Below are positions 3,201 through 14,971 of a stretch of DNA of 64,000 nucleotides, piece by piece (within the stretch, counting starts at the first letter, position 1; every line of letters starts with the position of its first letter). This DNA is from Ruditapes philippinarum. Taxonomy: Eukaryota. The position numbers and the translations under genes are program-made. The stretch covers positions 1 to 64,000 of the forward strand of contig NW_026855015.1 of the NCBI RefSeq assembly GCF_026571515.1. The letters run 5' to 3'. Under the pieces are notes generated by a model. The model did no database searches and had not been told where the DNA came from. It saw only the letters and a list, made by a program, of their open reading frames with translations.

Positions 3201-6200
3201 GCCTCAAGTGTGACTGATTTACTTTGAAATATATAAAGATGGGAATTTAGTTGGCCAACACCATTTGTACTTATCTTACCAGTAAATAGGTTGCTATGGC
3301 AACATCTTCAAACACATACTTCTGAGCACTAGTCTTTTCTGGCCATTTCTGAAAATCAAGTATAAGTTATTATATTATTCATACTACAGACTTTATCCTA
3401 CAGACATACATTGTACCACTCCGATAAAGATTTACTTATAAATCATGCAAATTTTTCTCTTATAAAGCTAAAGGTATTGCAAAAATTCATAGCCTTCAGA
3501 ATGAATATATAACTGCTTCAGTAACAGATAGTACACAATGCTTGCTTGTAAGAAAGTTACATTGTTTGTGCATCTGTTATAATATTATAACAATATTATA
3601 ATAAAAAAAAAAAATTATAACAATATTATAAATTGCACATTTGCATTTGTACAAAATAGAAGATTTATTCATTTATGAAGCCTTTATGTACCTTTAAAAC
3701 TCTCTACTATTTATAGCAAAATTTTATATGCAAACTAGCACAGGAGTACCGATCATTGAATGTTCACAAAATTGGTGTTTGATAGCAGAAAACATTTATC
3801 AAAAGTCACAAATTACTTCAAGTCCATTCCCATTTATTGGCATTACACCCTATACTAATATAAAGTATTCATATTAGTATATAGAGTGATAGGAATTGAC
3901 TTTATATTAGTATATAATGTCATGGGAATGGATTTAGAATTAATTTATGACTCTGGATATTTTTTAGGTATCAAACACATATTTTGTGAACATTCAATTA
4001 GCAAAACTACTGTGCAAACTAGAACCTTAGACTTTGAAGAGTTCAGAACTATACTTTCTATTACAAAAGTTTGCATGTAAGCTACAAACTTAGACTATGA
4101 ACAGAACAGAGTATAAAAGACAACAAAAACCTCTGCAATGGGGATGCCATATTTGTTTTTCAGTTCACTGTACAGTCTGCTATAGTTCTCTACAGAGATC
4201 AGACGCAGAGAAACAAGGCCTGTTCTCAGACTTGGCTGTTCACTCCATCTTGCAAGCTTCTGTAGAAGCTGACTTTTAATCCAGGTCAATGAGAGCTTTC
4301 TTTCAGAATCTGTAGAGCAGTCTGAAGTACTGGCATACAGGCAAATCCTAAAATGAGATTTATATATAAATAAATTTTGTTATGAAAATAAATGAAAATT
4401 CATTATAGTTTACCAAAGAATATAGTCATGTTTATTGAAATGTTGACAGTATAAAAGGTTCCTTATAAGAAATGATTAAAATACAATAAATATATTAAAG
4501 GTCCATTAAACTTAAAAAAGATGATACTTTCATTTTTCAAAAGCATTAATTTTTTATTGTTGGTGACCTGATACAGTTTCTCAAATAGCCAAAAAGTATG
4601 AAAGATAGAATGTTTGTAAGTCAAAATACAACTTTCAGATTTTGCTACCTTCAATGTATATCCGGTATTATTTCACATTTGATGTGACTTATTTCGGGTG
4701 ATAGATGCTGCTTTTCAAATTTACAATCACAACATAATGAAAAACCTGTAGGCCCTTTTTACAGGAAAGAATAAAAAAATTCTTAGGATAAATGGGCCTT
4801 TCAGGCTAAGAGAAAATCATTCTATGAGTTCATCAAATTCTGTCACATATGTACATGTGTATTTTCATAATATTCATGATCAAATCCTTTATTAAATCAA
4901 ATTAAAAAACTTATTATACACTCCTCTGGATAGTGCCATTATAAACATTCTGAACATGAAAAACTACAGTTACCTTTTCTCAGGACTTTCTAGATATTTA
5001 AAGCAATATCCAACTTCCAATGGTACAATCTTTTTGGAATCATCTAATCTTTTCAAGGGGATGAAAGAACAACTGTTCTGAGATTTATCTAAAATAAGAA
5101 GAATATAATTGACTTAAATATGCTGTATAAAATTTACAACAGAAAAAGTGCAAGCAGGGTGTTTAAAATAAAATTATATTTAGTTAGACAGACCCTAGTA
5201 GGTTTTGCTATCAAGTACGAACACCAAACATGTCACCAGTTATGCTCTTAAATTTTTTTTTTTTAATTTAAAGCATAAAGTGTTGATACAGTAATTAACC
5301 TCCCTGCAATAACCATGCAGGGTATAAGCCAAGATATAATTTTTTGGCTGAAAGTACATCACTACATGAAGGTCACTATACAGCAGGGAATGAGCTCCAT
5401 AGGGCACTGCCGTTCAAGCAGTCTTATTGTATTTTGAGCTCATGCAACCTAGTAGCCTTCCTTATCATCCCTTCCTAGTCTGTTGAGCCACTATAGGATC
5501 TGCCTTCTATATGTTAAAAGAAACAAAGTTCTTTATCCTAACTAGTGAGTAGTCAGTCGGTGTTCTTTCTGCAGATGACCTGTGCCTCTCAGAGTCAGAC
5601 GCATACCAAGCCTTGGCAAGGGGAAGAGAAGAAGGGATATCTATAAATCCTTTTAAATAATATAAATTTCAAGGTTATGTTATTAAATTAAATAATTTGT
5701 TCTTCGGAGTAAACTAAAGTTATTTGGGGATCAAAACATTTCATGAAGGTAAGCTATCCAACTATGGACATCATTTTTTCACTCGGGTGCCTGTTTGTGT
5801 CTGAAATAGTGCATGTTTCGGTACATGTACCTGAGGTCGTCTGATCTAACATTAAAGCTAAAGAGCTGGCGTAATAGTACTGTTGGTGCCGGGACTTAAA
5901 ATACCTTTTGTCCATGGTTTAGGTGCTACATTTTTTAAACAACTTCGCTCGTCCAAAATTATCTTAATGGGTAATTGTCTATTTCCAATGCAAGTCGAAA
6001 CAGTTTCACTGTAAGAAAAAAAAATGTTTGAAACATAGGTCCAACCATTCAAACTGAAAATATTTGGCTATCTAGATCTATTAACACTTACCATAAATTA
6101 CTAATTCTGGAATATTAGCGTGCCTTTCTGGTTGTTTTGGCAACAGTTGACGGATAATAACAGCAACATCATCTTCTGATATATCTGAAAGACCTTCAAC

Positions 6201-6518
6201 ACAATCACTTGTATTTTCTTTAATGTCATGTTCAATGGCAAGTTCACCCCCAGATATATTCTGTGAATTAAACACCTCATCAAATGAGAATCCGTGCAAG
6301 TCTAAACTAAGATTTTCAAAAGCAGATTTTAATTCATGTCTGCAAAATGTGTCCTTTGAAATAATCTTAAAGTATTCTAGTCTAGAACCACAAAGACGTC
6401 TATTCACAACGTGTGGTTTATTTAACCATACAGTCAGAGAATTTGCAAACCCTTCACTATTTCCATTGCACACTTCTGTAGCAAGCACTTCTCCATAGTT
6501 TATAAAATGTTCATTCAT
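256..6518 (-). CDS. TRMT44: tRNA (uracil-O(2)-)-methyltransferase TRMT44, 5' part (8 exons; continues beyond left edge)
   Basis: Exons 6092-6518, 4974-5088, 4131-4347, 3280-3348, 2705-2812, 2020-2091, 1410-1516 and 256-457 are all GT-AG and splice in frame (439 codons). Motifs: WPEKTSAQKYVFEDVAIATYLL, SAM-binding FVDLGCGNGLLVHIL, GIDVRKRNIW, WLIGNHSDELTPWIP, VLPCC, LRIPSTKR. Confidence 0.93.
640..873 (-). mobile_element. tRNA-derived SINE, family A (MetaSINE-like core), 5'-truncated
   Basis: The minus strand has a B-box-like GGTTCTAATCCC, the core GAGGAAGCTATCCAGCTAGCTTACGGAACG...GCACCTGAGGTCTTCCTCCACCAG and a (CAAA)n tail. The same core recurs at 5740, 48855 and 60775. Confidence 0.8.
906..1281. 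mobile_element. non-autonomous hairpin-bearing dispersed element
   Basis: Starts GGATATTGAATGAG and contains a long imperfect inverted repeat (about 933-1031), then ATATTCTATTTATCAC...GTGATAAAT. A related copy lies at 22609-22840 and a similar structure at about 45800-45990. Confidence 0.6.
2147..2430 (+). mobile_element. Helentron/HINE-like element fragment with about 160-bp internal units
   Basis: GGACAAAAATAAAGTATGAAAATTAACAAAGGGCAATAACTC units also occur at 25690-25900. TGTGTCGCC here is the inverse of GGCGACACA at the end of the 26090 copy. Confidence 0.6.
5740..5858 (+). mobile_element. degraded SINE family A fragment
   Basis: AAGCTATCCA...CTCGGGTGCCTGTTTGTGTCTGAAATAGTGCA...CCTGAGGTC matches the SINE core at 640-873. 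Confidence 0.6.
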
Positions 6519-6814
6519 TTCTGAGCCTTATTTCTTACCCTTATTATGTTCTATTTCAAATCTTTAATTAATTCAGCGTATTTTCAACATGACGAAATAA
6601 ATTCATTATTTAGAAAATCTGATATTTCAACATAATGGGCGCAGACATCTTGAATTCAGACTGGTATAAAATTCATTGTCTTTAGACGTTTGCATTTTTG
6701 CAAAATCCTATAGCGTGCGGCAGCGTGATCACCGTTTTTAAGACGCTTTAAAAATCACCAACTGCGAACAATTCAATGCGGAAGTGAGATGCCGGTTAAT
6801 GTAAACAAATCAAG
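6519..6814. promoter_or_regulatory. bidirectional promoter region between TRMT44 and the ICE2-like gene
   Basis: The two divergent ATGs are 296 bp apart. There is local CpG enrichment and an ETS/GABPA-type GCGGAAGTG at 6778-6786. Confidence 0.65.
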
Positions 6815-9800
6815 ATGTGTTTGCCATGCATGTCACTTTTTGGATGTTTTATTGAATTCCTGCCTTACATATGCCTTGTCACTATACCATTTTTCGGTTC
6901 TTTTGAAGGAATTGATGTGATTCTTCGACTTTCACTGCTGATTTTCTTGTATACAAGCGTCAGTGCAATAATTCCTAAATCATTGGTAATAATTTTAATT
7001 GTTTCAGATATAGCAGGTGTGATTTTCATGGTATAAATAACTATGCAAAATTTGCAATAGTATAATTATGTAGAATAATTTGGTAAATTTATATTTAAAT
7101 ATTTGAAATGATGCCGAGAATCTTTAATGGTACATTACATTTATTAAATTACATACATTACTCTGCAATGTACATTTGTAGTCTCAATATTTTGACTGCA
7201 AGAACGACCAATTATATTCAATCTAAAATTACACAGATGTAACGGGCGACCAAAGTCTATATGTCTTCTTGTTTACATGTCTACGTACCCATGAGGTGTT
7301 TGACATTAGTGATAGATATTAGCTTAAGGTCAGGTCTTCAGTGTACCAGTTTATATAGGAATGACATGACATGTACTATGCAGCATCAGATGAAAAACAA
7401 AAATGTTAAAAAGCGGCTTATAAAGTTTTGGAAACCATAACTAAATAGATACATAATAAAAAGTCCTAAAGCGCACAATTTATTGGCTAGTCATTGTGTT
7501 ACACAAAGACGTCTATTCACCACATGAGGTTTACCTTTCACTGTTACCATAAAGTCCTAAAGCACACAATTTATTGGGCTAGTCATTGTGTGCCTGATTG
7601 GATTTAAAGTTAACACAATGCTTTTGTCCAGTTTCTTAAATTATGTGCAAAGTTTTTAAAGGCACCTGAACCACTGATACAGTGAAACTCCAATAAGTTG
7701 TTAAAAGGTTAATGTTAATATTTTCATACAAGTTAACAATTAACATAGCAGATCATAAACAGGCAAGTATTGAAACCATAAATATTAGTAGTAGTAAAGG
7801 ACACATCGCTTTATATATAATGTTATAATATATATAATAATAGTTCCGGTGCCGATTTTATGCTTAAAGACTCAGGAATCTTGCATAAGAGAAAACCCTG
7901 GTTAGGATATTAAAAACATCAGCCAATCTGATTCCATATTATGAGCTTACATGTACAGTGTACCTTTATTAATTATCATATATACATAAAGATAGTTTTA
8001 ATAACTTTTATTGATTAAAATATTTATGAAGATATTTGTCCAGTATCATTTTACATTTAACTTAAATATTAAATTTTATTTTCTATTTTCAGCATTATGT
8101 CATACCATACCTAAACCTTTTGGCGTTTGGTTTAATTGTTATTTATCTACCACTCGGCTCGATACCATATCCGATAATTTGGCTGTACGATAAGATATTA
8201 TGGTTATCTGATCCAGTCTTGTTAGCTGTAGAGGTGATATTGGCCCTGAACTTTGTCATGCACTGTAGTAGAAGATGTGCAGAAAATATTGAAGAAGACG
8301 AAGAGGAGGCGTGGAAATGGAAGGTATCATATTCTATGTATCATATTTTACATAACATATTTTATGCGCTAAAATAGTGAAATACATTACAGCCTGAAAA
8401 AGGCCCTTAACAAAGAAATTTCTCTGAAAGGTGTTGCTCTATTGAAGTTAATTCTATGTCAAGTCTTATATTTGGAAGCATTGATACAGTTGCTGAGAAG
8501 AGGTTATTGCTCTATACAGTGGACCATTCTGACGAGGTTGCACAGTACATTACAATTAACAAATATCTTTACTTCTTTTTGTATTTGCCGTACCTGTTTT
8601 TTTTTAATCAAGAATTTTATTTCCTAAACATTAAATTGGAAAGTCGCCAGTTTTTTTGCTTAAAATGCATGTCAAATGATTTGGGCTATGGATTTTGCTT
8701 CCATTTTACCATTAACTCCGAGAGTCTCCTGACAAAATGTCAGAAGATCATATTAATGAATCTTGAATTTTTAGAAGTCTGAGAATTTTAGGAAAAAATA
8801 TGTGACCAAGTTTTGGTCATGAATTTGGCAAAATAGAATTCTGTCTTACAAATTACCCATCCAGATTTTTGGTAACAGTTTTTGTGCACTAGTTTATTTT
8901 TTTCTTTTACTAGTTATATTGTATTGTAGGTTAGAATAATGTACATTAATCAATGCCTTAATAATGAAGCCTGATTGTCGTTTAAAGCATGTCATACAAC
9001 AAGGTTAATTTTTCCACATCTATTTTTCAATAAGACAATGTAATACATGTAATGCACATTTTGAATTTAGAATTTCATATTATGAGTGTTATTTTCACTT
9101 TGTTGATATGACTTTGTTATAAGATATACAATTACTATTATTAGAGACTCCAAAATACATGTGTAGTTATTTTATCCTGCACTATAGGCAAGCCATGAAT
9201 TACATACATGTATATATTATAAGTATAAAATATTATGCTACTTTAATACTTATATAAATATTGCTGTTTTTTATCATTACAGGTGTTGTTGTCAGTATTT
9301 TCAGCAGCATGCTATGCTATTTTAGCTATTATAGTGGTACATGTGTACCAACAAGGCTCCGATATACAGTTCTGGTGAGCCTCAGATTTATTATACTATT
9401 TTGAATGCATGTGTTATTTTAAAAATAATATACATTATTGTACCATTTTTTTTTACTTTGTTGCTTTATGTTAAATGTGTTTAAAGCTATATCTGATGAA
9501 ATATTATATGAAAAATTTAAAAAAAGTAAAATTATGTTGTTTTCATAACACTTATGGTTGCTTCTTTAAATATTTGTCATATAGATTGTCTGTGTAATTT
9601 ATTATACCTAAACGGACTAAAATGTTCTGGAACAAAATATTCTTTTCCTCTTTTTAAAAGCTTTTGCAATGATTTCACACATGCCCTACTCACTTTCAAT
9701 AAAATATATATGGATAGATATTTTTTATTCTAGGTGTTACATTACCATTTCAATCACAATATAAAAATAATATTTCAGACCATAGGCAATAAAAAAATAT

Positions 9801-12800
9801 TTTTACAAACTTTAAGCAAATTGACTATATTATATCTCCCTTAAGCAAATTGACTATTACCTCTCCCACTTCACCCCACCCCCTCCCCTTTCCAGTTCCC
9901 CTACCCCTTTAACATCAAATTTTTCTTCAATCTTTGAAAATCATGTGCACTGTGTGTGGTGCCTATGGCAAATTTTTTAAAGGTACAGTAGCAGTATATG
10001 CTAAATAAGTTAGTCAGTGGCTGAATCTGTAAAATAGAATTTATTTCCATTTTTTCTCTCATTTGATTGCATGTGTTATTCTTTCAAATATTTTCTTTAT
10101 TTTTGTGTGTAGATCTTTTAAATTATAGGACAATATTTTAATTTGATTGCATGTGTTGTGTTCTTACAGGGTTGTGGTATTAGTGTTGTGCTTTAGTTTT
10201 ATGTTAGCAGCTCACAATATGATGTGGATGTCTGTTGAAGGTAGGATGTTATTTGTTTAAAGGAGCACCACTGAGGTCCAACAGCCTTAGAACATAAAAT
10301 ATGAATTGCCTCCACAGATTTGCTGGAATAAGTAACGCTGAAAGATATGCAAAAGATAATAAAGAAATATACTAAGAAATAAAGTAAAAATTTCATTTTT
10401 GTGCTTTTCATAGACCGATTTGGCGCTTTGGTATTTTTGGTCATTTTTCACAAATAGAATAACAATTTTTGAAAAATGGAGTGAAAAAAATTTGCACACA
10501 ATTTATTTGCCTATTTGGGGGTTGGTGTGAATATAGAGAATGGCTTGTTGGAAGGTGGTACAGAGATTAACCTAGTGACTTGCAGTAGTTGGCAAGTACT
10601 GAGTTTTGAAATTTGATTGTCCAAAGGTCAAGGCTACAGTGGTTATCACACTGTGTGACAGAAATGTTAATGCTAAATGACTGTGAGTTTTTCATCCTCC
10701 AATCATGATCATTGCCTTAAGTATACACAGACGCAGGTCTTACCTTAGTGAAATATAATTGACAATTTTGTAATTATTACATAGATATAAATGTCCATTT
10801 ATTGGATTGGAATAAAATTTTCGTGTTAAAAAAGGAAAATGCCTGAAACACTGTCATTTGCTTGTGAATGGCTCACACAAGACTGCTTGAAATCAAGAAG
10901 TTATACAATAAATTGTGTATATTAGGGTTTACTCTACTCAAATTTTCCTGCGGTCTCCTATTTGATGGTTTATGTAGAAAAATTTCTATCTGGAATGTCA
11001 ATGATAAGCTTTGTATTAAAATATTTTCAGGTATAATAAGTGATGTAGCATTTGTGACACTAGCATCTATGGTAATATTATACACAATGAAAGAAGAAGT
11101 TTCACTAAAACACAAACCACTAGCTACACCTTCCTCATGGTACAGGTAAGAATTTGATAGTATTTTCTCAGGGCATTTTCTCCCTATCACCAGCGGCCCC
11201 ATAAGGCCCCATTCCCAATCTAAAATAATCTCTCTTTTCCCAATTACAAAGAAGTATTCCCTACAGCTGCCTTAAATATTATTCTGTTCAATTCTTTAAG
11301 AACAACTGAATTGCTTTTTGACTTGTTAAAAGAAGGAACAGGTAATACTGAATAATCAAACACATGAAATTTCAATAAAACTAAAATAGTTTTTAAATAG
11401 TTTGATATTTCTCAAATTTCCTTAAATGTCGCATATTCTTCCAAATAACTGGAAAAGGGAGACATTTGTTAACCAGATAATCTCAAGAAAAAAATGTTTT
11501 GTTTAAAAAAAAATAATAGATTAGTGGGCATGAACAATTTCTCCTGATGTGTGCCAAACTTGTCATACATTTCTCAAAAATTTCAATAGCATTTTTACAG
11601 AACTATTTTCACCAAGTGCCTTGGTTTATATTGTTGGCGTTGCGTGATTTGAAAATTTCTTGCAGAATTATGGCCCTTTGTTGTTCTTTTTTTCCCTCGC
11701 ACATGAAAATATTGGCAGAAATACCAGATTTTGTGAAAATCTGGTGTCATTTCTTTTTAATGACAATTTTTTATTTAGGGCATAAAGTTGTATGATGTGA
11801 AAACAAACTAGTGTCATTCCTGGCCTTTTTCAGTTGATATGATTGTATCTTGATAAAAATCATACCAAAGTACATGTTCTAAAATTGAAAGAATGATTTT
11901 TGTAAATTTCAGAGGTTGGTACTTGCCTAAAATGACTTCTAAAGTTACTTAAAAAAATGGCAGAATAATTTTCAATTTTTTATATTTTTCAGTTTTTACA
12001 GCAGAGGCTCTATGCTAACTGAGACTTACAAAATCATACACACTTCTATAGGTAAGCTTTTTATTGTGTTTAATTGATGGGCTGTCAAATGGTGATTTTA
12101 ACTTTTCAGGCATTTTTTCGAGTTTCATAGTCAAGATTAATAGGATCTTCCATTCCTTACTATTTCATATACTGTAAATTTTAAACTTATCTGAGAAATG
12201 CAGTAAAGACAGGCTTTATATCATCTTCCCAGATTTGTTAAATCATTACTATTCCTATTATCATAAATAGACTTGTCCAATTCTTTCAATCTAGACAAAA
12301 CCATTTATCATTTTAGGGGAAATTTTAAAATATGTATCAACTGAATGGTGAACAGTGCAGACGTAGACAGTGACTTTTTTAAGGTCAATTTTGGCTGAAA
12401 TTGGGCCTCTTTCCCCACCTGAAAATTATAAATTTTCCATTTAATAGAACAATTTTAATCCCCTCAACATTTTAAAAAGTAATGGAAACTACTTAAATGT
12501 TTTGGAGTGATTTAAACTGACGAAAAACAGTATGGATATATGCAGGGGAGTTGTCCTAATTTTTTTTATTATTTCGAAATTGTATTGGTTATTAAAGATT
12601 GTTTCAAACCTTGATGATTTTGATTTGGCCCACTCCCAAAAAATGCTGATAACCACACATATTTTTCCATCTGATAGGCCCCTCCACCTTTCACCAAAAT
12701 GATTAAAACCAATGCATGATAATCACATGGTATAATGCATATTTTCTTTTCTTATCTATTTCAGAGAATGCTCAGGTTGCTATACTCTACCTAAAGAGAT

Positions 12801-13618
12801 TCCTTAGTCCACTATTCTTGTTGTTGTTGGGCGTCCGTCTGTACAGTATACTTTTCCTTATCGGGAGAATTATGAAAAACTTTGAATTAGAGGTACGTTT
12901 TTAACTACGTACAGTAAAGCTCAGGTTATAGTGAACTTGTCCAGATTATGACTTTTTTATATGCTTTGTCCGAGATTTTGATAAAAAAGTTTACCACTTT
13001 TGGGAGATTTGACTGGTAATGTCTACTTTAGTAAAAATATTTAAGAGTAATTGCCTTGATGAGGAGTTATTGCCCTTTGATAAGAATATCCAGAGATTTT
13101 AAATAGATATTGATAATTGATTGACAACTTGTTTACTGATAATTAATTTAATAAACATTGGCATCAAATGACAAATGAAACAGAGTGTTTATAACTTCAT
13201 TGAGTATATTTACATTGTAGTTAGAAATATCTGAGCATGATTAGCATTTAACAATAACGTTTTTATTACTGTGATATGAGAATAGATGTTTTTTTTATAT
13301 TAATAATAAAATTTTCAAAAATATTTCATCAAATTTCAGACAGAGGAGTCCTATTTAGAAGAATTGCAGACAGAGTTATCACCCTTTAAATCTCCGTTTA
13401 TTGTGAAATGTTCCATGATATTTATGATAACTCAGTTTACCACGAGACTGTATTACCAGTGTAATGGCGTATCAGTATTACCAGCATGGTTAGACTCACT
13501 TTTACCAGAAGATATTCTCTTCGGCAGGATGTTTCAAGTCATTGTGTTGAACAGTTTCTATATTTGGAGATTATATTGTGCTGATAATTGGCAGTGGAAT
13601 GACTGGTTCTCTGCTTGA
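6815..13618 (+). CDS. multipass membrane protein, ICE2-like (ICE2/SERINC superfamily), 381 aa, 8 exons
   Basis: Exons 6815-6985, 8093-8323, 9283-9374, 10170-10240, 11031-11145, 11993-12051, 12765-12892 and 13340-13618 are GT-AG and splice to 1146 nt in frame. There are about 9-10 hydrophobic segments. Motif order resembles yeast Ice2: LVTIP; SDPVLLAVE; WKVLLSVFS; EGIISD; LSPLFLLLLGVR; CSMIFMITQ. The gene model is solid; the family call is from memory. Confidence 0.75.
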
Positions 13619-13850
13619 AGAAGAAATTTGTCTGGTTCTCTGCTTGAAAAAGAAATTTGTCTGGTTGTCTGCTTGAAGAAAAAAATTTGTCTGGTTCTCT
13701 GCTTGAAAAAGAAATTCATCTGGTTCCCTGCTTGAAGAAGAAATTTGTCTGGTTCTCTGCTTGAAGAAGAAATTTGTCTGGTTTACTGCTTGAAGATGAA
13801 ATTTGGTTGTCTGCTTGAAAACAGAAATTTGAATAGTTCTCTGCTTGATA
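13603..13850 (+). repeat. 29-bp tandem repeat (about 8.5 copies) starting across the stop codon
   Basis: Unit CTGGTTCTCTGCTTGAAGAAGAAATTTGT; the first unit contains the codons W-F-S-A-stop. Confidence 0.9.
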
Positions 13851-14971
13851 TAATGCTTCAAGTGAAGGAAACATGAAGTGTTTTTTTTTTTTTTGATAGC
13901 AAAAAGGTTAATGGTTCTCTGTTAAGAAATAATTTGTTTTTGATCTTTTTGTTTGAAAAATTGCTTTTGAATAATTTTATTTTTTTAGAGTTTAATTAAG
14001 TTCAGAAGTCAGAATACGGGAGTAATATTTTAGAATAGTTTTTACTGTCTTATTATTTGCATTATTTTAAAGGCTCATGATGCCTAAGAAATTTATTTTA
14101 ATTTTTTCAAAAACTTCTTTTTTTTAAGTGTGTCAGGGGCAAGTGTTATGGTTTCAAAAATTACACATTGGCCAAGTACCTGAACCATCTTTTGCTTCCG
14201 TTGCTATCTGGTAATTAGTTTAAATATGGTAATTAGTATTTTGAATGAAAGTCAAAATACTTCTTTGTTTACATTTTTGCTACTTTTCAAGTTTTGTGAA
14301 AAATAATCACACATTCACACTCTATTTTCTTTATGTGATAAGCATCTAACATTCTCAAAACCATTATTTTCTAAGGGGAGAAAAAATATTAGTTTCATTG
14401 ACATAATGTGCCATTAACATTCTGAAAAAGGGGATATAGGTCAAGATTAATGATTTATATATAAATGTTGCATGGCTACTTTCTGTGGTTATTATTTGAT
14501 TTCTATACTATTCTCATTCATGCAAATTCATAATCTTTGAGTTTATTTATGCAGTCTTTGCAATCCAAATCAGGGTATTTTTTTTATCCATTTTCCTTTG
14601 ATGAACATGTGAAGTGTTTTGTTAAAAAATGTTTCAAGTATTTGTACAAGTTTTTACAAAGGCAAAGAAGGAAAGTGACCTGACCTAAAAGAGCAAAAAA
14701 CTCAATTTCACAGTCAGATGACTTAAATAGTAGAATGATGCCTCCCAATTTTTTTTCAACAATTTGAATAAATCAGGATACTCTTTAAGAAAACATCCTC
14801 TTGAATTTTAATTAAAGCTGTGGCTAAATTAAATTTTCCTTTGCCTTTATAAAAAATAGCACTACACCTTAAAACGTCTTTAACTTTTCACTGCTCATTA
14901 TTACTAATATTTTTATATGACATAATGATTTAAATTTGAAATCTGTTTTGTTTTGCTGTACTTTAAATGTA

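What the first reader, a model, noticed from the sequence alone, without database searches (positions are those of the whole stretch)
6815..13618. Intron-rich animal gene encoding an Ice2-like ER membrane protein
Seen: eight exons splice into a 381-aa protein with about 10 hydrophobic helices. Inference, comparing with my recollection of yeast Ice2, in colinear order: LLSIP vs LVTIP; LTKSTPFFTLSEG vs LWLSDPVLLAVEV; TWIISSLLTS vs KWKVLLSVFS; YRIY vs VHVY; KGSVIES vs EGIISD; a hydrophilic loop; VSPAIVINLCFR vs LSPLFLLLLGVR; CILIAMYTH vs CSMIFMITQ; and a final YATEL vs YIWRL. Established: Ice2 is usually treated as a fungal family, is a remote SERINC homologue, and regulates ER membrane expansion through Nem1-Spo7/Pah1. 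This protein lacks the Cys-rich N-terminus of ordinary SERINCs. It may therefore be an overlooked animal Ice2 branch, possibly regulating the CTDNEP1-NEP1R1-lipin axis in invertebrates. Seven spliceosomal introns argue against contamination or recent transfer.
Basis: partly seen in the sequence, partly recalled or inferred. Interest (0 to 1): 0.82.

Follow-up and report, generated by a model that had tools for sequence, protein, structure and literature searches.

The report
Clam Ice2-like SERINC-fold membrane gene
This is a real, expressed eight-exon Manila clam gene for a ten-helix membrane protein with the SERINC fold, but the invertebrate "Ice2-like" family it belongs to was already described in 2021, so it is a correct call rather than a discovery.

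Summary
Eight exons at 6815-13618 (+), all with GT..AG borders, join into a 1146-nt frame. Its 381-aa product is letter for letter RefSeq XP_060586074.1, [quoted passage not shown]. Six of the seven junctions appear as joints in intron-less contigs of two public runs.

The protein is 46% identical over its full length (E 1e-121) to scallop XP_021373130.1. Alli-Balogun & Levine (2021) list that protein among sequences used to define an "intermediate" ICE2-like family, mostly from invertebrates. Their tree places it on a common branch with fungal Ice2, off SERINC.

My own tests:
- **Fold:** the AlphaFold model (pLDDT 81) matches only SERINC structures over its full length (VIA Z 16.8 and 15.1; next best 8.5).
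- **Pfam ICE2:** it hits none of 33 family members.
- **Pfam Serinc:** about ten members give sub-threshold hits; the six whose coordinates I saw share one register.
- **Protein-language features:** fungal ICE2 clusters (0.85-0.89) rank above Serinc (0.75).
- **Genome:** canonical SERINC genes lie elsewhere, and this gene is single copy.

I could not run a direct Ice2 comparison or a tree. Control of CTDNEP1-NEP1R1/lipin remains untested speculation.

The parts
6815..6985 (+). Exon 1, start codon to residue 57 (TM1, TM2; N-terminus MCLPCMSLFGC with 3 Cys)
   Evidence: ATG at 6815, in-frame stop upstream, donor ttg|GTAATA. The product is identical to P0046. Matched by P0046 in the six-frame genome search. 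It is inferred from the 228 nt by which X2's 925-nt contig runs beyond exon 2.
8093..8323 (+). Exon 2, residues 58-134 (TM3 and the long crossing helix TM4, with invariant E104)
   Evidence: Joint 8323>9283 with GT..AG in contigs of X1 and X2. E104 is invariant in 27 of 27 sequences.
9283..9374 (+). Exon 3, 92 nt (TM5)
   Evidence: Joints on both sides in X1 and X2.
10170..10240 (+). Exon 4, 71 nt (TM6, with invariant H180)
   Evidence: Joints 9374>10170 and 10240>11031 in X1 and X2.
11031..11145 (+). Exon 5, 115 nt (TM7 and the start of the hydrophilic loop)
   Evidence: Joints in X1 and X2.
11993..12051 (+). Exon 6, 59 nt (loop with short helices)
   Evidence: Joints 11145>11993 and 12051>12765 in X1 and X2. 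It is too short to be seen in the six-frame search.
12765..12892 (+). Exon 7, 128 nt (amphipathic helix and TM8, with invariant R271-L272)
   Evidence: Joints in X1 and X2.
13340..13618 (+). Exon 8 coding part, residues 290-381 plus TGA at 13616-13618 (TM9 with invariant T320-Q321; TM10 with invariant R352, Q355 and F362)
   Evidence: Joint 12892>13340 in X1 and X2. This exon alone found the family in the full-library search.
13603..13848 (+). 29-nt tandem repeat, 8.6 copies, starting inside the last five codons and filling the start of the 3' UTR
   Evidence: An X1 contig runs from exon 8 into it, and a second covers it to the end of the laid stretch at 13700.

Best explanation
**Identity.** The stretch is the Manila clam gene LOC132741830. 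It is a single-copy, eight-exon gene, and spliced copies of it appear in many public runs. It encodes a 381-aa protein with ten transmembrane helices. The protein belongs to the invertebrate-centred "intermediate / ICE2-like" family of the SERINC superfamily described by Alli-Balogun & Levine in 2021.

**Shown here.** The gene model and its splicing. Orthology to a family member listed in that paper. A full-length SERINC-type fold, in which the long helices TM4 and TM8 correspond by position to SERINC's crossing helices. A set of invariant polar residues inside the membrane helices: E104 in TM4, H180 in TM6, R271 in TM8, T320/Q321 in TM9, and R352/Q355 in TM10.

**Inferred mechanism.** Like SERINC, and as predicted for Ice2p, the protein holds a membrane lipid in the cleft and groove where its two helical subdomains meet. 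It either moves that lipid or senses it, and so tunes membrane lipid balance. I put about 50% on lipid handling of this kind. I put about 15% on the specific Ice2 mechanism, which is binding the Spo7 counterpart NEP1R1 and thereby holding back the lipin phosphatase CTDNEP1.
For: **Gene model and expression**
- Gene model.
- The product is identical to RefSeq XP_060586074.1.
- Six junctions appear in intron-less contigs of two runs. Twenty runs from 13 studies hold about 7-10% of the stretch's words, close to its exonic share.
- Single copy in the assembly.

**Family membership**
- Full-length orthologues occur in bivalves, gastropods and cephalopods at 25-90% identity.
- The scallop orthologue P0005 carries accession XP_021373130.1. 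That accession is in Supplementary list (2) of the 2021 paper, which describes the family in its section 16.

**Fold**
- AlphaFold model: pLDDT 81.1, pTM 0.79, ten TM helices.
- Foldseek: only SERINC3 7ru6_A and Drosophila SERINC 6sp2_A reach probability 1.00, at E 0.014 and 0.016. The best other probability is 0.15.
- VIA-align: 6sp2_A Z 16.8 with 299 residues aligned over model 2-372; 7rug_A Z 16.8; 7ru6_A Z 15.1. The next best is 8.4-8.5.

**Sequence-level links**
- Sub-threshold Pfam Serinc hits occur in about ten family members. The six I saw in detail share one register: profile positions about 118-268 against family residues about 65-205. The best E-value is 7.7e-4.
- Protein-language features give 0.97 for the protein's own mollusc cluster, where 30% of members carry PF08426. 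Fungal ICE2 clusters score 0.85-0.89 and Serinc 0.75.
- hhalign of the family profile against a SERINC exon of this same genome is weak (E 0.07). It places invariant E104 on the Gln of SERINC's TM4 F-x-x-x-Q. The paper equates DmSERINC F177/Q181 with Ice2p F154/E158. That the clam residues are the DmSERINC ones is read by motif, not aligned.
Against: - No Pfam model passes its cut-off on this protein. ICE2 PF08426 gives nothing at all in 33 family members.
- A profile of the family finds no PDB sequence at E <= 10.
- Foldseek E-values for SERINC are only about 0.015. Global TM-scores are 0.40-0.51 and rmsd is 5-7 A, so the match is to the architecture rather than a close superposition.
- The tool notes that helical models can reach Z of about 14 without a known relationship.
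- The closer kinship to Ice2 than to SERINC rests on the published tree and on language-model features. I ran no alignment or tree of my own.
- Nothing here bears on subcellular location, lipid binding or partners.
Confidence: 0.85

Rival explanations
1. It is the working counterpart of yeast Ice2. It would be an ER protein that binds NEP1R1 (the Spo7 counterpart), inhibits the CTDNEP1-NEP1R1 phosphatase, keeps lipin phosphorylated and so favours ER membrane growth in invertebrates.
For: - The published tree puts the family on a common branch with Ice2.
- Language-model features rank ICE2 clusters above Serinc.
- The family has Glu at the TM4 cleft position, as Ice2p does (E158), where SERINC has Gln.
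- Nem1/Spo7/Pah1 are conserved in animals, according to PMC8591542.
Against: - There is no test of binding or location.
- Pfam ICE2 does not recognise the family.
- The paper finds the family more similar to SERINC than Ice2 is, and says functions may have been repurposed across the superfamily.
- The Ice2 surface that binds Spo7 is not mapped in the sources I read, so its conservation cannot be judged.
- Animals make PC and PE mainly by the Kennedy pathway, which alters the PA/DAG logic (PMC8591542).
Confidence: 0.15
2. It works like a SERINC. It would be a lipid transporter or scramblase of post-ER membranes, with no link to the lipin pathway.
For: - The only structural matches are SERINCs, over the full length.
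- The only recurring Pfam signal is Serinc.
- The short Cys-bearing N-terminus recalls the SERINC start.
Against: - The protein is about 100 residues shorter than SERINCs and fails the Serinc cut-off.
- The clam keeps at least two canonical SERINC genes as well, so this gene is not simply a replacement.
- A shared fold does not show a shared activity.
Confidence: 0.3
3. It is merely a fast-evolving canonical SERINC paralogue of molluscs, or an unrelated ten-helix protein whose resemblance to SERINC is convergent.
For: Sequence signals to SERINC are all below threshold, and rmsd is high.
Against: - The family is old and wide. My hits span bivalves, gastropods and cephalopods. The paper lists cnidarians, echinoderms, amphioxus, annelids, chelicerates and amoebae.
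- The published PSI-BLAST and HMMER searches link it first to Ice2 and then to SERINC.
- Z of 15-17 over about 280-300 residues is twice the next match.
Confidence: 0.04

Closest known systems
"Intermediate" ICE2-like family of Alli-Balogun & Levine 2021 (e.g. Mizuhopecten XP_021373130.1, Nematostella XP_001631941.1, Thecamonas XP_013756618.1)
   Same: It is a full-length orthologue of the listed scallop member: 46% identity, E 1e-121, 379 against 381 aa. It is of similar length (338-395 aa for the two seed proteins), carries no Pfam domain above cut-off, and is found in invertebrates.
   Different: Nothing of substance differs. The Manila clam protein is not itself in the paper's list and is still labelled "uncharacterized" in RefSeq.
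Fungal Ice2 (Pfam PF08426; S. cerevisiae Ice2p, inhibitor of Nem1-Spo7)
   Same: - Ten predicted helices.
- A shared branch in the published tree.
- Language-model similarity of 0.85-0.89.
- Glu at the TM4 cleft position.
   Different: - There is no PF08426 hit.
- It is shorter than yeast Ice2p (491 aa), which carries two budding-yeast-specific inserts.
- ER location and Spo7 binding are unknown for the animal family.
SERINC (Pfam PF03348; structures 6SP2, 7RU6, 7RUG)
   Same: - Full-length match to the fold, Z 15-17.
- Long TM4 and TM8 helices at the positions of SERINC's crossing helices.
- Weak Serinc profile hits in a shared register where coordinates were shown.
- A short Cys-bearing N-terminus.
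   Different: - It falls below the Serinc cut-off, with hits of about 11-14 bits where bits were shown, against 24.
- It is about 381 aa, against 513 for Drosophila SERINC.
- Sequence identity is 12-13% in the structural alignments.
- Canonical SERINC genes exist separately in the same genome.

Membership tests
Intermediate ICE2-like family (Alli-Balogun & Levine 2021) | Members find one another directly by sequence search | tested here: met
   The local BLASTP of the model against P0005 (XP_021373130.1, listed in the paper's Supplementary list 2) gives 46% identity over residues 5-381 at E 1e-121. Exon 8 alone recovers the family from 1.84 billion proteins.
Intermediate ICE2-like family (Alli-Balogun & Levine 2021) | No known domain above threshold; length of the order of 340-395 aa with about ten TM helices | tested here: met
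   P0046 has no Pfam family at E <= 1. It is 381 aa with ten TM helices in the model.
Intermediate ICE2-like family (Alli-Balogun & Levine 2021) | Iterated profile searches reach Ice2 first and SERINC later | not tested
The alignment search scored only the 8000 best word-sharing candidates and returned only molluscs.
ICE2 (Pfam PF08426) | Score at or above the curated cut-off (25 bits) on the ICE2 profile | tested here: not met
   There is no PF08426 hit, even at E <= 10, in P0046 or 32 relatives. The six-frame search of the genome with PF08426 finds nothing in this gene. Against that, the Atlas reports PF08426 on 30% of the mollusc cluster under Pfam 38.1.
ICE2 (Pfam PF08426) | ER membrane protein that binds Spo7 and inhibits Nem1-Spo7 | not testable with these tools
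   This needs localisation and binding experiments.
SERINC (Pfam PF03348) | Score at or above the curated cut-off (24 bits) on the Serinc profile | tested here: not met
   Hits are sub-threshold only. About ten members score, at 11-14 bits where bits were shown, with a best E of 7.7e-4. The six-frame Serinc search finds canonical genes on C4608 and C5026 but not this gene.
SERINC superfamily (fold level) | Ten-helix SERINC architecture of two four-helix subdomains joined by crossing helices TM4 and TM8 | tested here: met
   VIA Z 16.8 to 6sp2_A (299 aligned, model 2-372), 16.8 to 7rug_A and 15.1 to 7ru6_A, with the next best at 8.4-8.5. Foldseek gives probability 1.00 for the two SERINC entries only. 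The model has long TM4 (83-125) and TM8 (262-285) helices. The subdomain packing itself was not inspected.

The most novel reading that the evidence does not exclude
The invertebrate Ice2-like family is the missing animal counterpart of yeast Ice2. It would be a membrane-embedded brake on the CTDNEP1-NEP1R1 lipin phosphatase that sets ER membrane output, was lost in vertebrates, and is replaced there by other controls.
Probability: 0.12. Interest if true: 0.7.

Novelty: new member of a known kind. Interest (0 to 1): 0.27.

Why it matters
The practical value is modest. A clam protein labelled "uncharacterized" can now be annotated as a SERINC-superfamily, Ice2-like membrane protein, on fold evidence that the 2021 paper did not present for this family.

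The open question is functional. I found no paper testing what this family does in any animal. Yeast Ice2 controls the conserved lipin phosphatase complex, and I found no animal counterpart of that role described. The family is therefore a reasonable candidate to test in a tractable invertebrate. That idea follows from published work, not from this window.

Tried and rejected
**Searches that found nothing useful**
- An exon-by-exon Pfam scan of seven of the eight exons (exon 6, 19 aa, is under the 20-residue minimum) found nothing. The exons are too short.
- The word-index search with exon 8 found only one 68-aa fragment, because of the length window.
- The alignment search with A1 scored only the 8000 best candidates and returned molluscs only. 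It never reached Ice2 or non-mollusc members.
- A profile of the family against PDB sequences gave no hit at E <= 10.
- PF08426 against the clam's own genome gave two weak hits elsewhere (E 0.2 and 0.4) and none in this gene.
- The Atlas holds no structure model for P0002 or P0005, so there was no search by structure.
- The search of earlier findings holds nothing under the words SERINC or Ice2.

**Steps that were blocked or left out**
- No direct alignment, profile-profile comparison or tree with Ice2 or full-length SERINC sequences was made. No tool gave me such sequences by reference, and I did not type any from memory.
- The joined protein was never typed or sent to a search tool. Searches went exon by exon, by reference. 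The join was made only inside scripts, for the frame check, hydropathy and a local comparison with proteins already fetched. From then on the identical database protein P0046 stood in for it.
- No complex prediction was run, since I do not claim binding.

**Readings rejected**
- Contamination or a pseudogene. The gene is spliced, appears in intron-less contigs of public runs, and is conserved across molluscs.
- A canonical SERINC.
Full report
**1. The observation.**

Reading 6500-14000 and checking by script gives eight exons on the + strand:

| Exon | Coordinates |
|---|---|
| 1 | 6815-6985 |
| 2 | 8093-8323 |
| 3 | 9283-9374 |
| 4 | 10170-10240 |
| 5 | 11031-11145 |
| 6 | 11993-12051 |
| 7 | 12765-12892 |
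| 8 | 13340-13618 |

Every intron begins GT and ends AG behind a pyrimidine-rich tract. The exons sum to 1146 nt, which is 381 codons plus TGA. There is no internal stop, and an in-frame stop lies upstream of the ATG. Hydropathy shows eight or nine strong peaks and a weaker C-terminal pair.

The joined protein was never typed or sent to a search tool. It was built only inside scripts, for frame and hydropathy checks and for a local comparison with proteins already fetched.

**2. The gene is real and already annotated.**

Exon 8 alone, searched against 1.84 billion representatives, found 21 proteins, several of them full length at about 380 aa. A word search with the best one listed orthologues in many molluscs, all "uncharacterized" or "hypothetical".

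A cluster look-up returned P0046, which is XP_060586074.1, [quoted passage not shown]. This protein is identical to the spliced model at all 381 positions. From here on P0046 served as the reference for the whole protein. The Mercenaria orthologue is 90% identical without a gap.

Twenty public runs from 13 studies hold 7-10% of the stretch's sampled words, close to its exonic share. Their kind is only guessed to be RNA. Laid on 7750-13700, contigs of two of them skip introns 2 to 7 exactly at the predicted GT..AG borders. One 925-nt contig lies on exons 7, 5, 3 and 2 and runs 228 nt further, which fits exon 1 plus a short 5' UTR.

The exon 1-2 joint lay outside the 6,000-letter limit and is supported only indirectly. 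Raw RNA-seq reads, sampled at 4-6% of each run, cover the exons thinly, so expression is probably low. The gene is single copy in the 1.41-Gb assembly.

**3. What the protein is.**

*Pfam.* No family passes on any exon, on P0046 or on 32 relatives.
- ICE2 (PF08426) never appears, even at E <= 10. A six-frame search of the genome with it misses this gene.
- The only recurring signal is sub-threshold Serinc (PF03348), in about ten family members.
- In the six whose coordinates were shown, the register is the same: profile positions about 118-268 against family residues about 65-205. The best E-value is 7.7e-4.

*Canonical SERINCs.* The same Serinc profile finds two canonical SERINC genes on other contigs, at up to 64 bits per exon. 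The clam therefore has ordinary SERINCs in addition to this protein.

*Fold.* An AlphaFold model built with a 27-sequence mollusc alignment is confident (pLDDT 81.1, pTM 0.79). It has ten membrane helices, with TM4 (83-125) and TM8 (262-285) long.

| Search | SERINC matches | Best non-SERINC row |
|---|---|---|
| Foldseek, PDB | 7ru6_A E 0.014, 6sp2_A E 0.016; probability 1.00 for both | E 0.22; highest probability 0.15 |
| VIA-align, 48,161 chains | 7rug_A Z 16.8, 277 aligned, model 11-372 | Z 8.5 |
| VIA-align, Foldseek's top 1000 | 6sp2_A Z 16.8, 299 aligned, model 2-372; 7ru6_A Z 15.1 | Z 8.4 |

Rmsd is high (5-7 A) and TM-scores are 0.40-0.51. What is shared is the architecture over the full length, not fine detail. 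I take the SERINC fold as shown at the level of a prediction.

*Language-model features.* The nearest clusters are:
- its own mollusc cluster at 0.97, where 30% of members carry PF08426 under Pfam 38.1;
- two fungal ICE2 clusters at 0.85-0.89;
- a Serinc cluster at 0.75.

**4. The literature already has this family.**

Alli-Balogun & Levine (bioRxiv 10.1101/2021.01.08.425964; cited in PMC8591542 as Proteins 89:1240) showed that Ice2p belongs to the SERINC superfamily. In their section 16 they describe "an intermediate ICE2-like family".
- It comprises 42 proteins with no known domain, mostly from invertebrates, plus one fungus and several amoebae.
- In their tree it shares a branch with Ice2, off SERINC.
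- They also find it more similar to SERINCs than Ice2 is.

Their Supplementary list (2) names Mizuhopecten yessoensis XP_021373130.1, two Crassostrea sequences, Aplysia, Biomphalaria, Elysia, Pomacea and Octopus. XP_021373130.1 is my P0005. It is 46% identical to the clam protein over the full length, at E 1e-121.

The clam gene is thus an orthologue of a published member. "An overlooked animal Ice2 branch" is not new. A further search found no later paper on the family's function in animals.

**5. A residue-level hint, weak.**

hhalign of the family profile against a TM4 exon of the clam's own SERINC gives only E 0.07. It aligns LAVEVILALNFVMH with ILIQLILLIDFAHG. This places the family's invariant E104 on the Gln of SERINC's F-x-x-x-Q.

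The paper equates DmSERINC F177/Q181, a plug residue and a cleft-lining residue, with Ice2p F154/E158. The family has L100/E104 there, with E in 27 of 27 sequences. On this reading it shares the Ice2-type Glu. That the clam SERINC motif is the DmSERINC F177/Q181 site is read by motif, not by an alignment of mine.

Other invariant polar residues inside helices are H180, R271, T320/Q321 and R352/Q355. They fit a conserved intramembrane site. Whether they line the cleft was not checked on the model.

**6. How it most likely works.**

Shown: a conserved ten-helix SERINC-fold membrane protein, found as spliced transcript-like contigs in public runs and present across molluscs.

Inferred from the two characterised relatives: it holds a lipid at the interface of its subdomains, as the 2021 paper predicts for Ice2p from the Drosophila SERINC structure, and thereby affects membrane lipid balance. 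My odds:
- lipid handling in general, about 50%;
- SERINC-like transport in post-ER membranes, about 30%;
- the specific Ice2 mechanism of blocking the Nem1-Spo7 counterpart CTDNEP1-NEP1R1, about 12-15%.

The authors of the Ice2 mechanism paper themselves say only that SERINCs are possible distant counterparts still to be tested (PMC8591542).

**7. What could not be done.**
- No Ice2 or full-length SERINC sequence was available by reference.

**8. Verdict.**

This is a new member of a known kind and of modest interest.

Noticed in passing
window 13603-13848: A 29-nt minisatellite of 8.6 copies with 84% matches begins 13 nt before the stop codon. The last five codons (..W F S A stop) are part of its first unit. 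RNA-like contigs run into it, so it lies in the 3' UTR. The C-terminal WFSA is conserved in other clams, so the repeat probably grew out of the end of the coding sequence in this lineage.
   Followed up: partly
window 6084-6518 (- strand): An ATG-started 145-aa open frame of ordinary composition lies about 300 nt upstream of this gene's ATG, on the opposite strand. It has no Pfam match. It may be the first exon of a divergently transcribed neighbour that shares the promoter region.
   Followed up: partly
window 10340-10383, 11531-11729, 12282-12322 (introns 4, 5, 6): Short intronic patches reach contig depths of 270-430 in run X1, and two of them (10340-10383, 12282-12322) are also covered by raw RNA reads. 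Where loose ends were listed, the reads run on into unrelated sequence on both sides. These look like pieces of interspersed repeats transcribed from many other places, not parts of this gene.
   Followed up: no
proteins P0017 (2020 aa) and P0020 (864 aa), hits: An adhesion-GPCR-like protein (six GPS motifs plus 7tm_2) has four stretches, and a subtilase has one, that are 31-38% identical to the TM9-TM10 region of exon 8, at E 1e-9 and 1e-4. These could be chance similarity between hydrophobic helices, fused gene models, or a borrowed segment. This is unexplained.
   Followed up: no
P0006 (Mya arenaria, 236 aa) and P0003 (Dreissena, 150 aa): Besides their full-length orthologues, these two bivalves carry shorter second gene models of the same family, either fragments or partial duplicates. 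The Manila clam assembly has only one copy.
   Followed up: no
G000 contigs C3604, C8214, C13186, C2962: At least five near-identical weak Serinc-profile matches (positions 175-243, about 25 bits, each with internal stops) are scattered over several contigs. They look like a repeated pseudo-exon or a SERINC fragment carried by a repeat.
   Followed up: no
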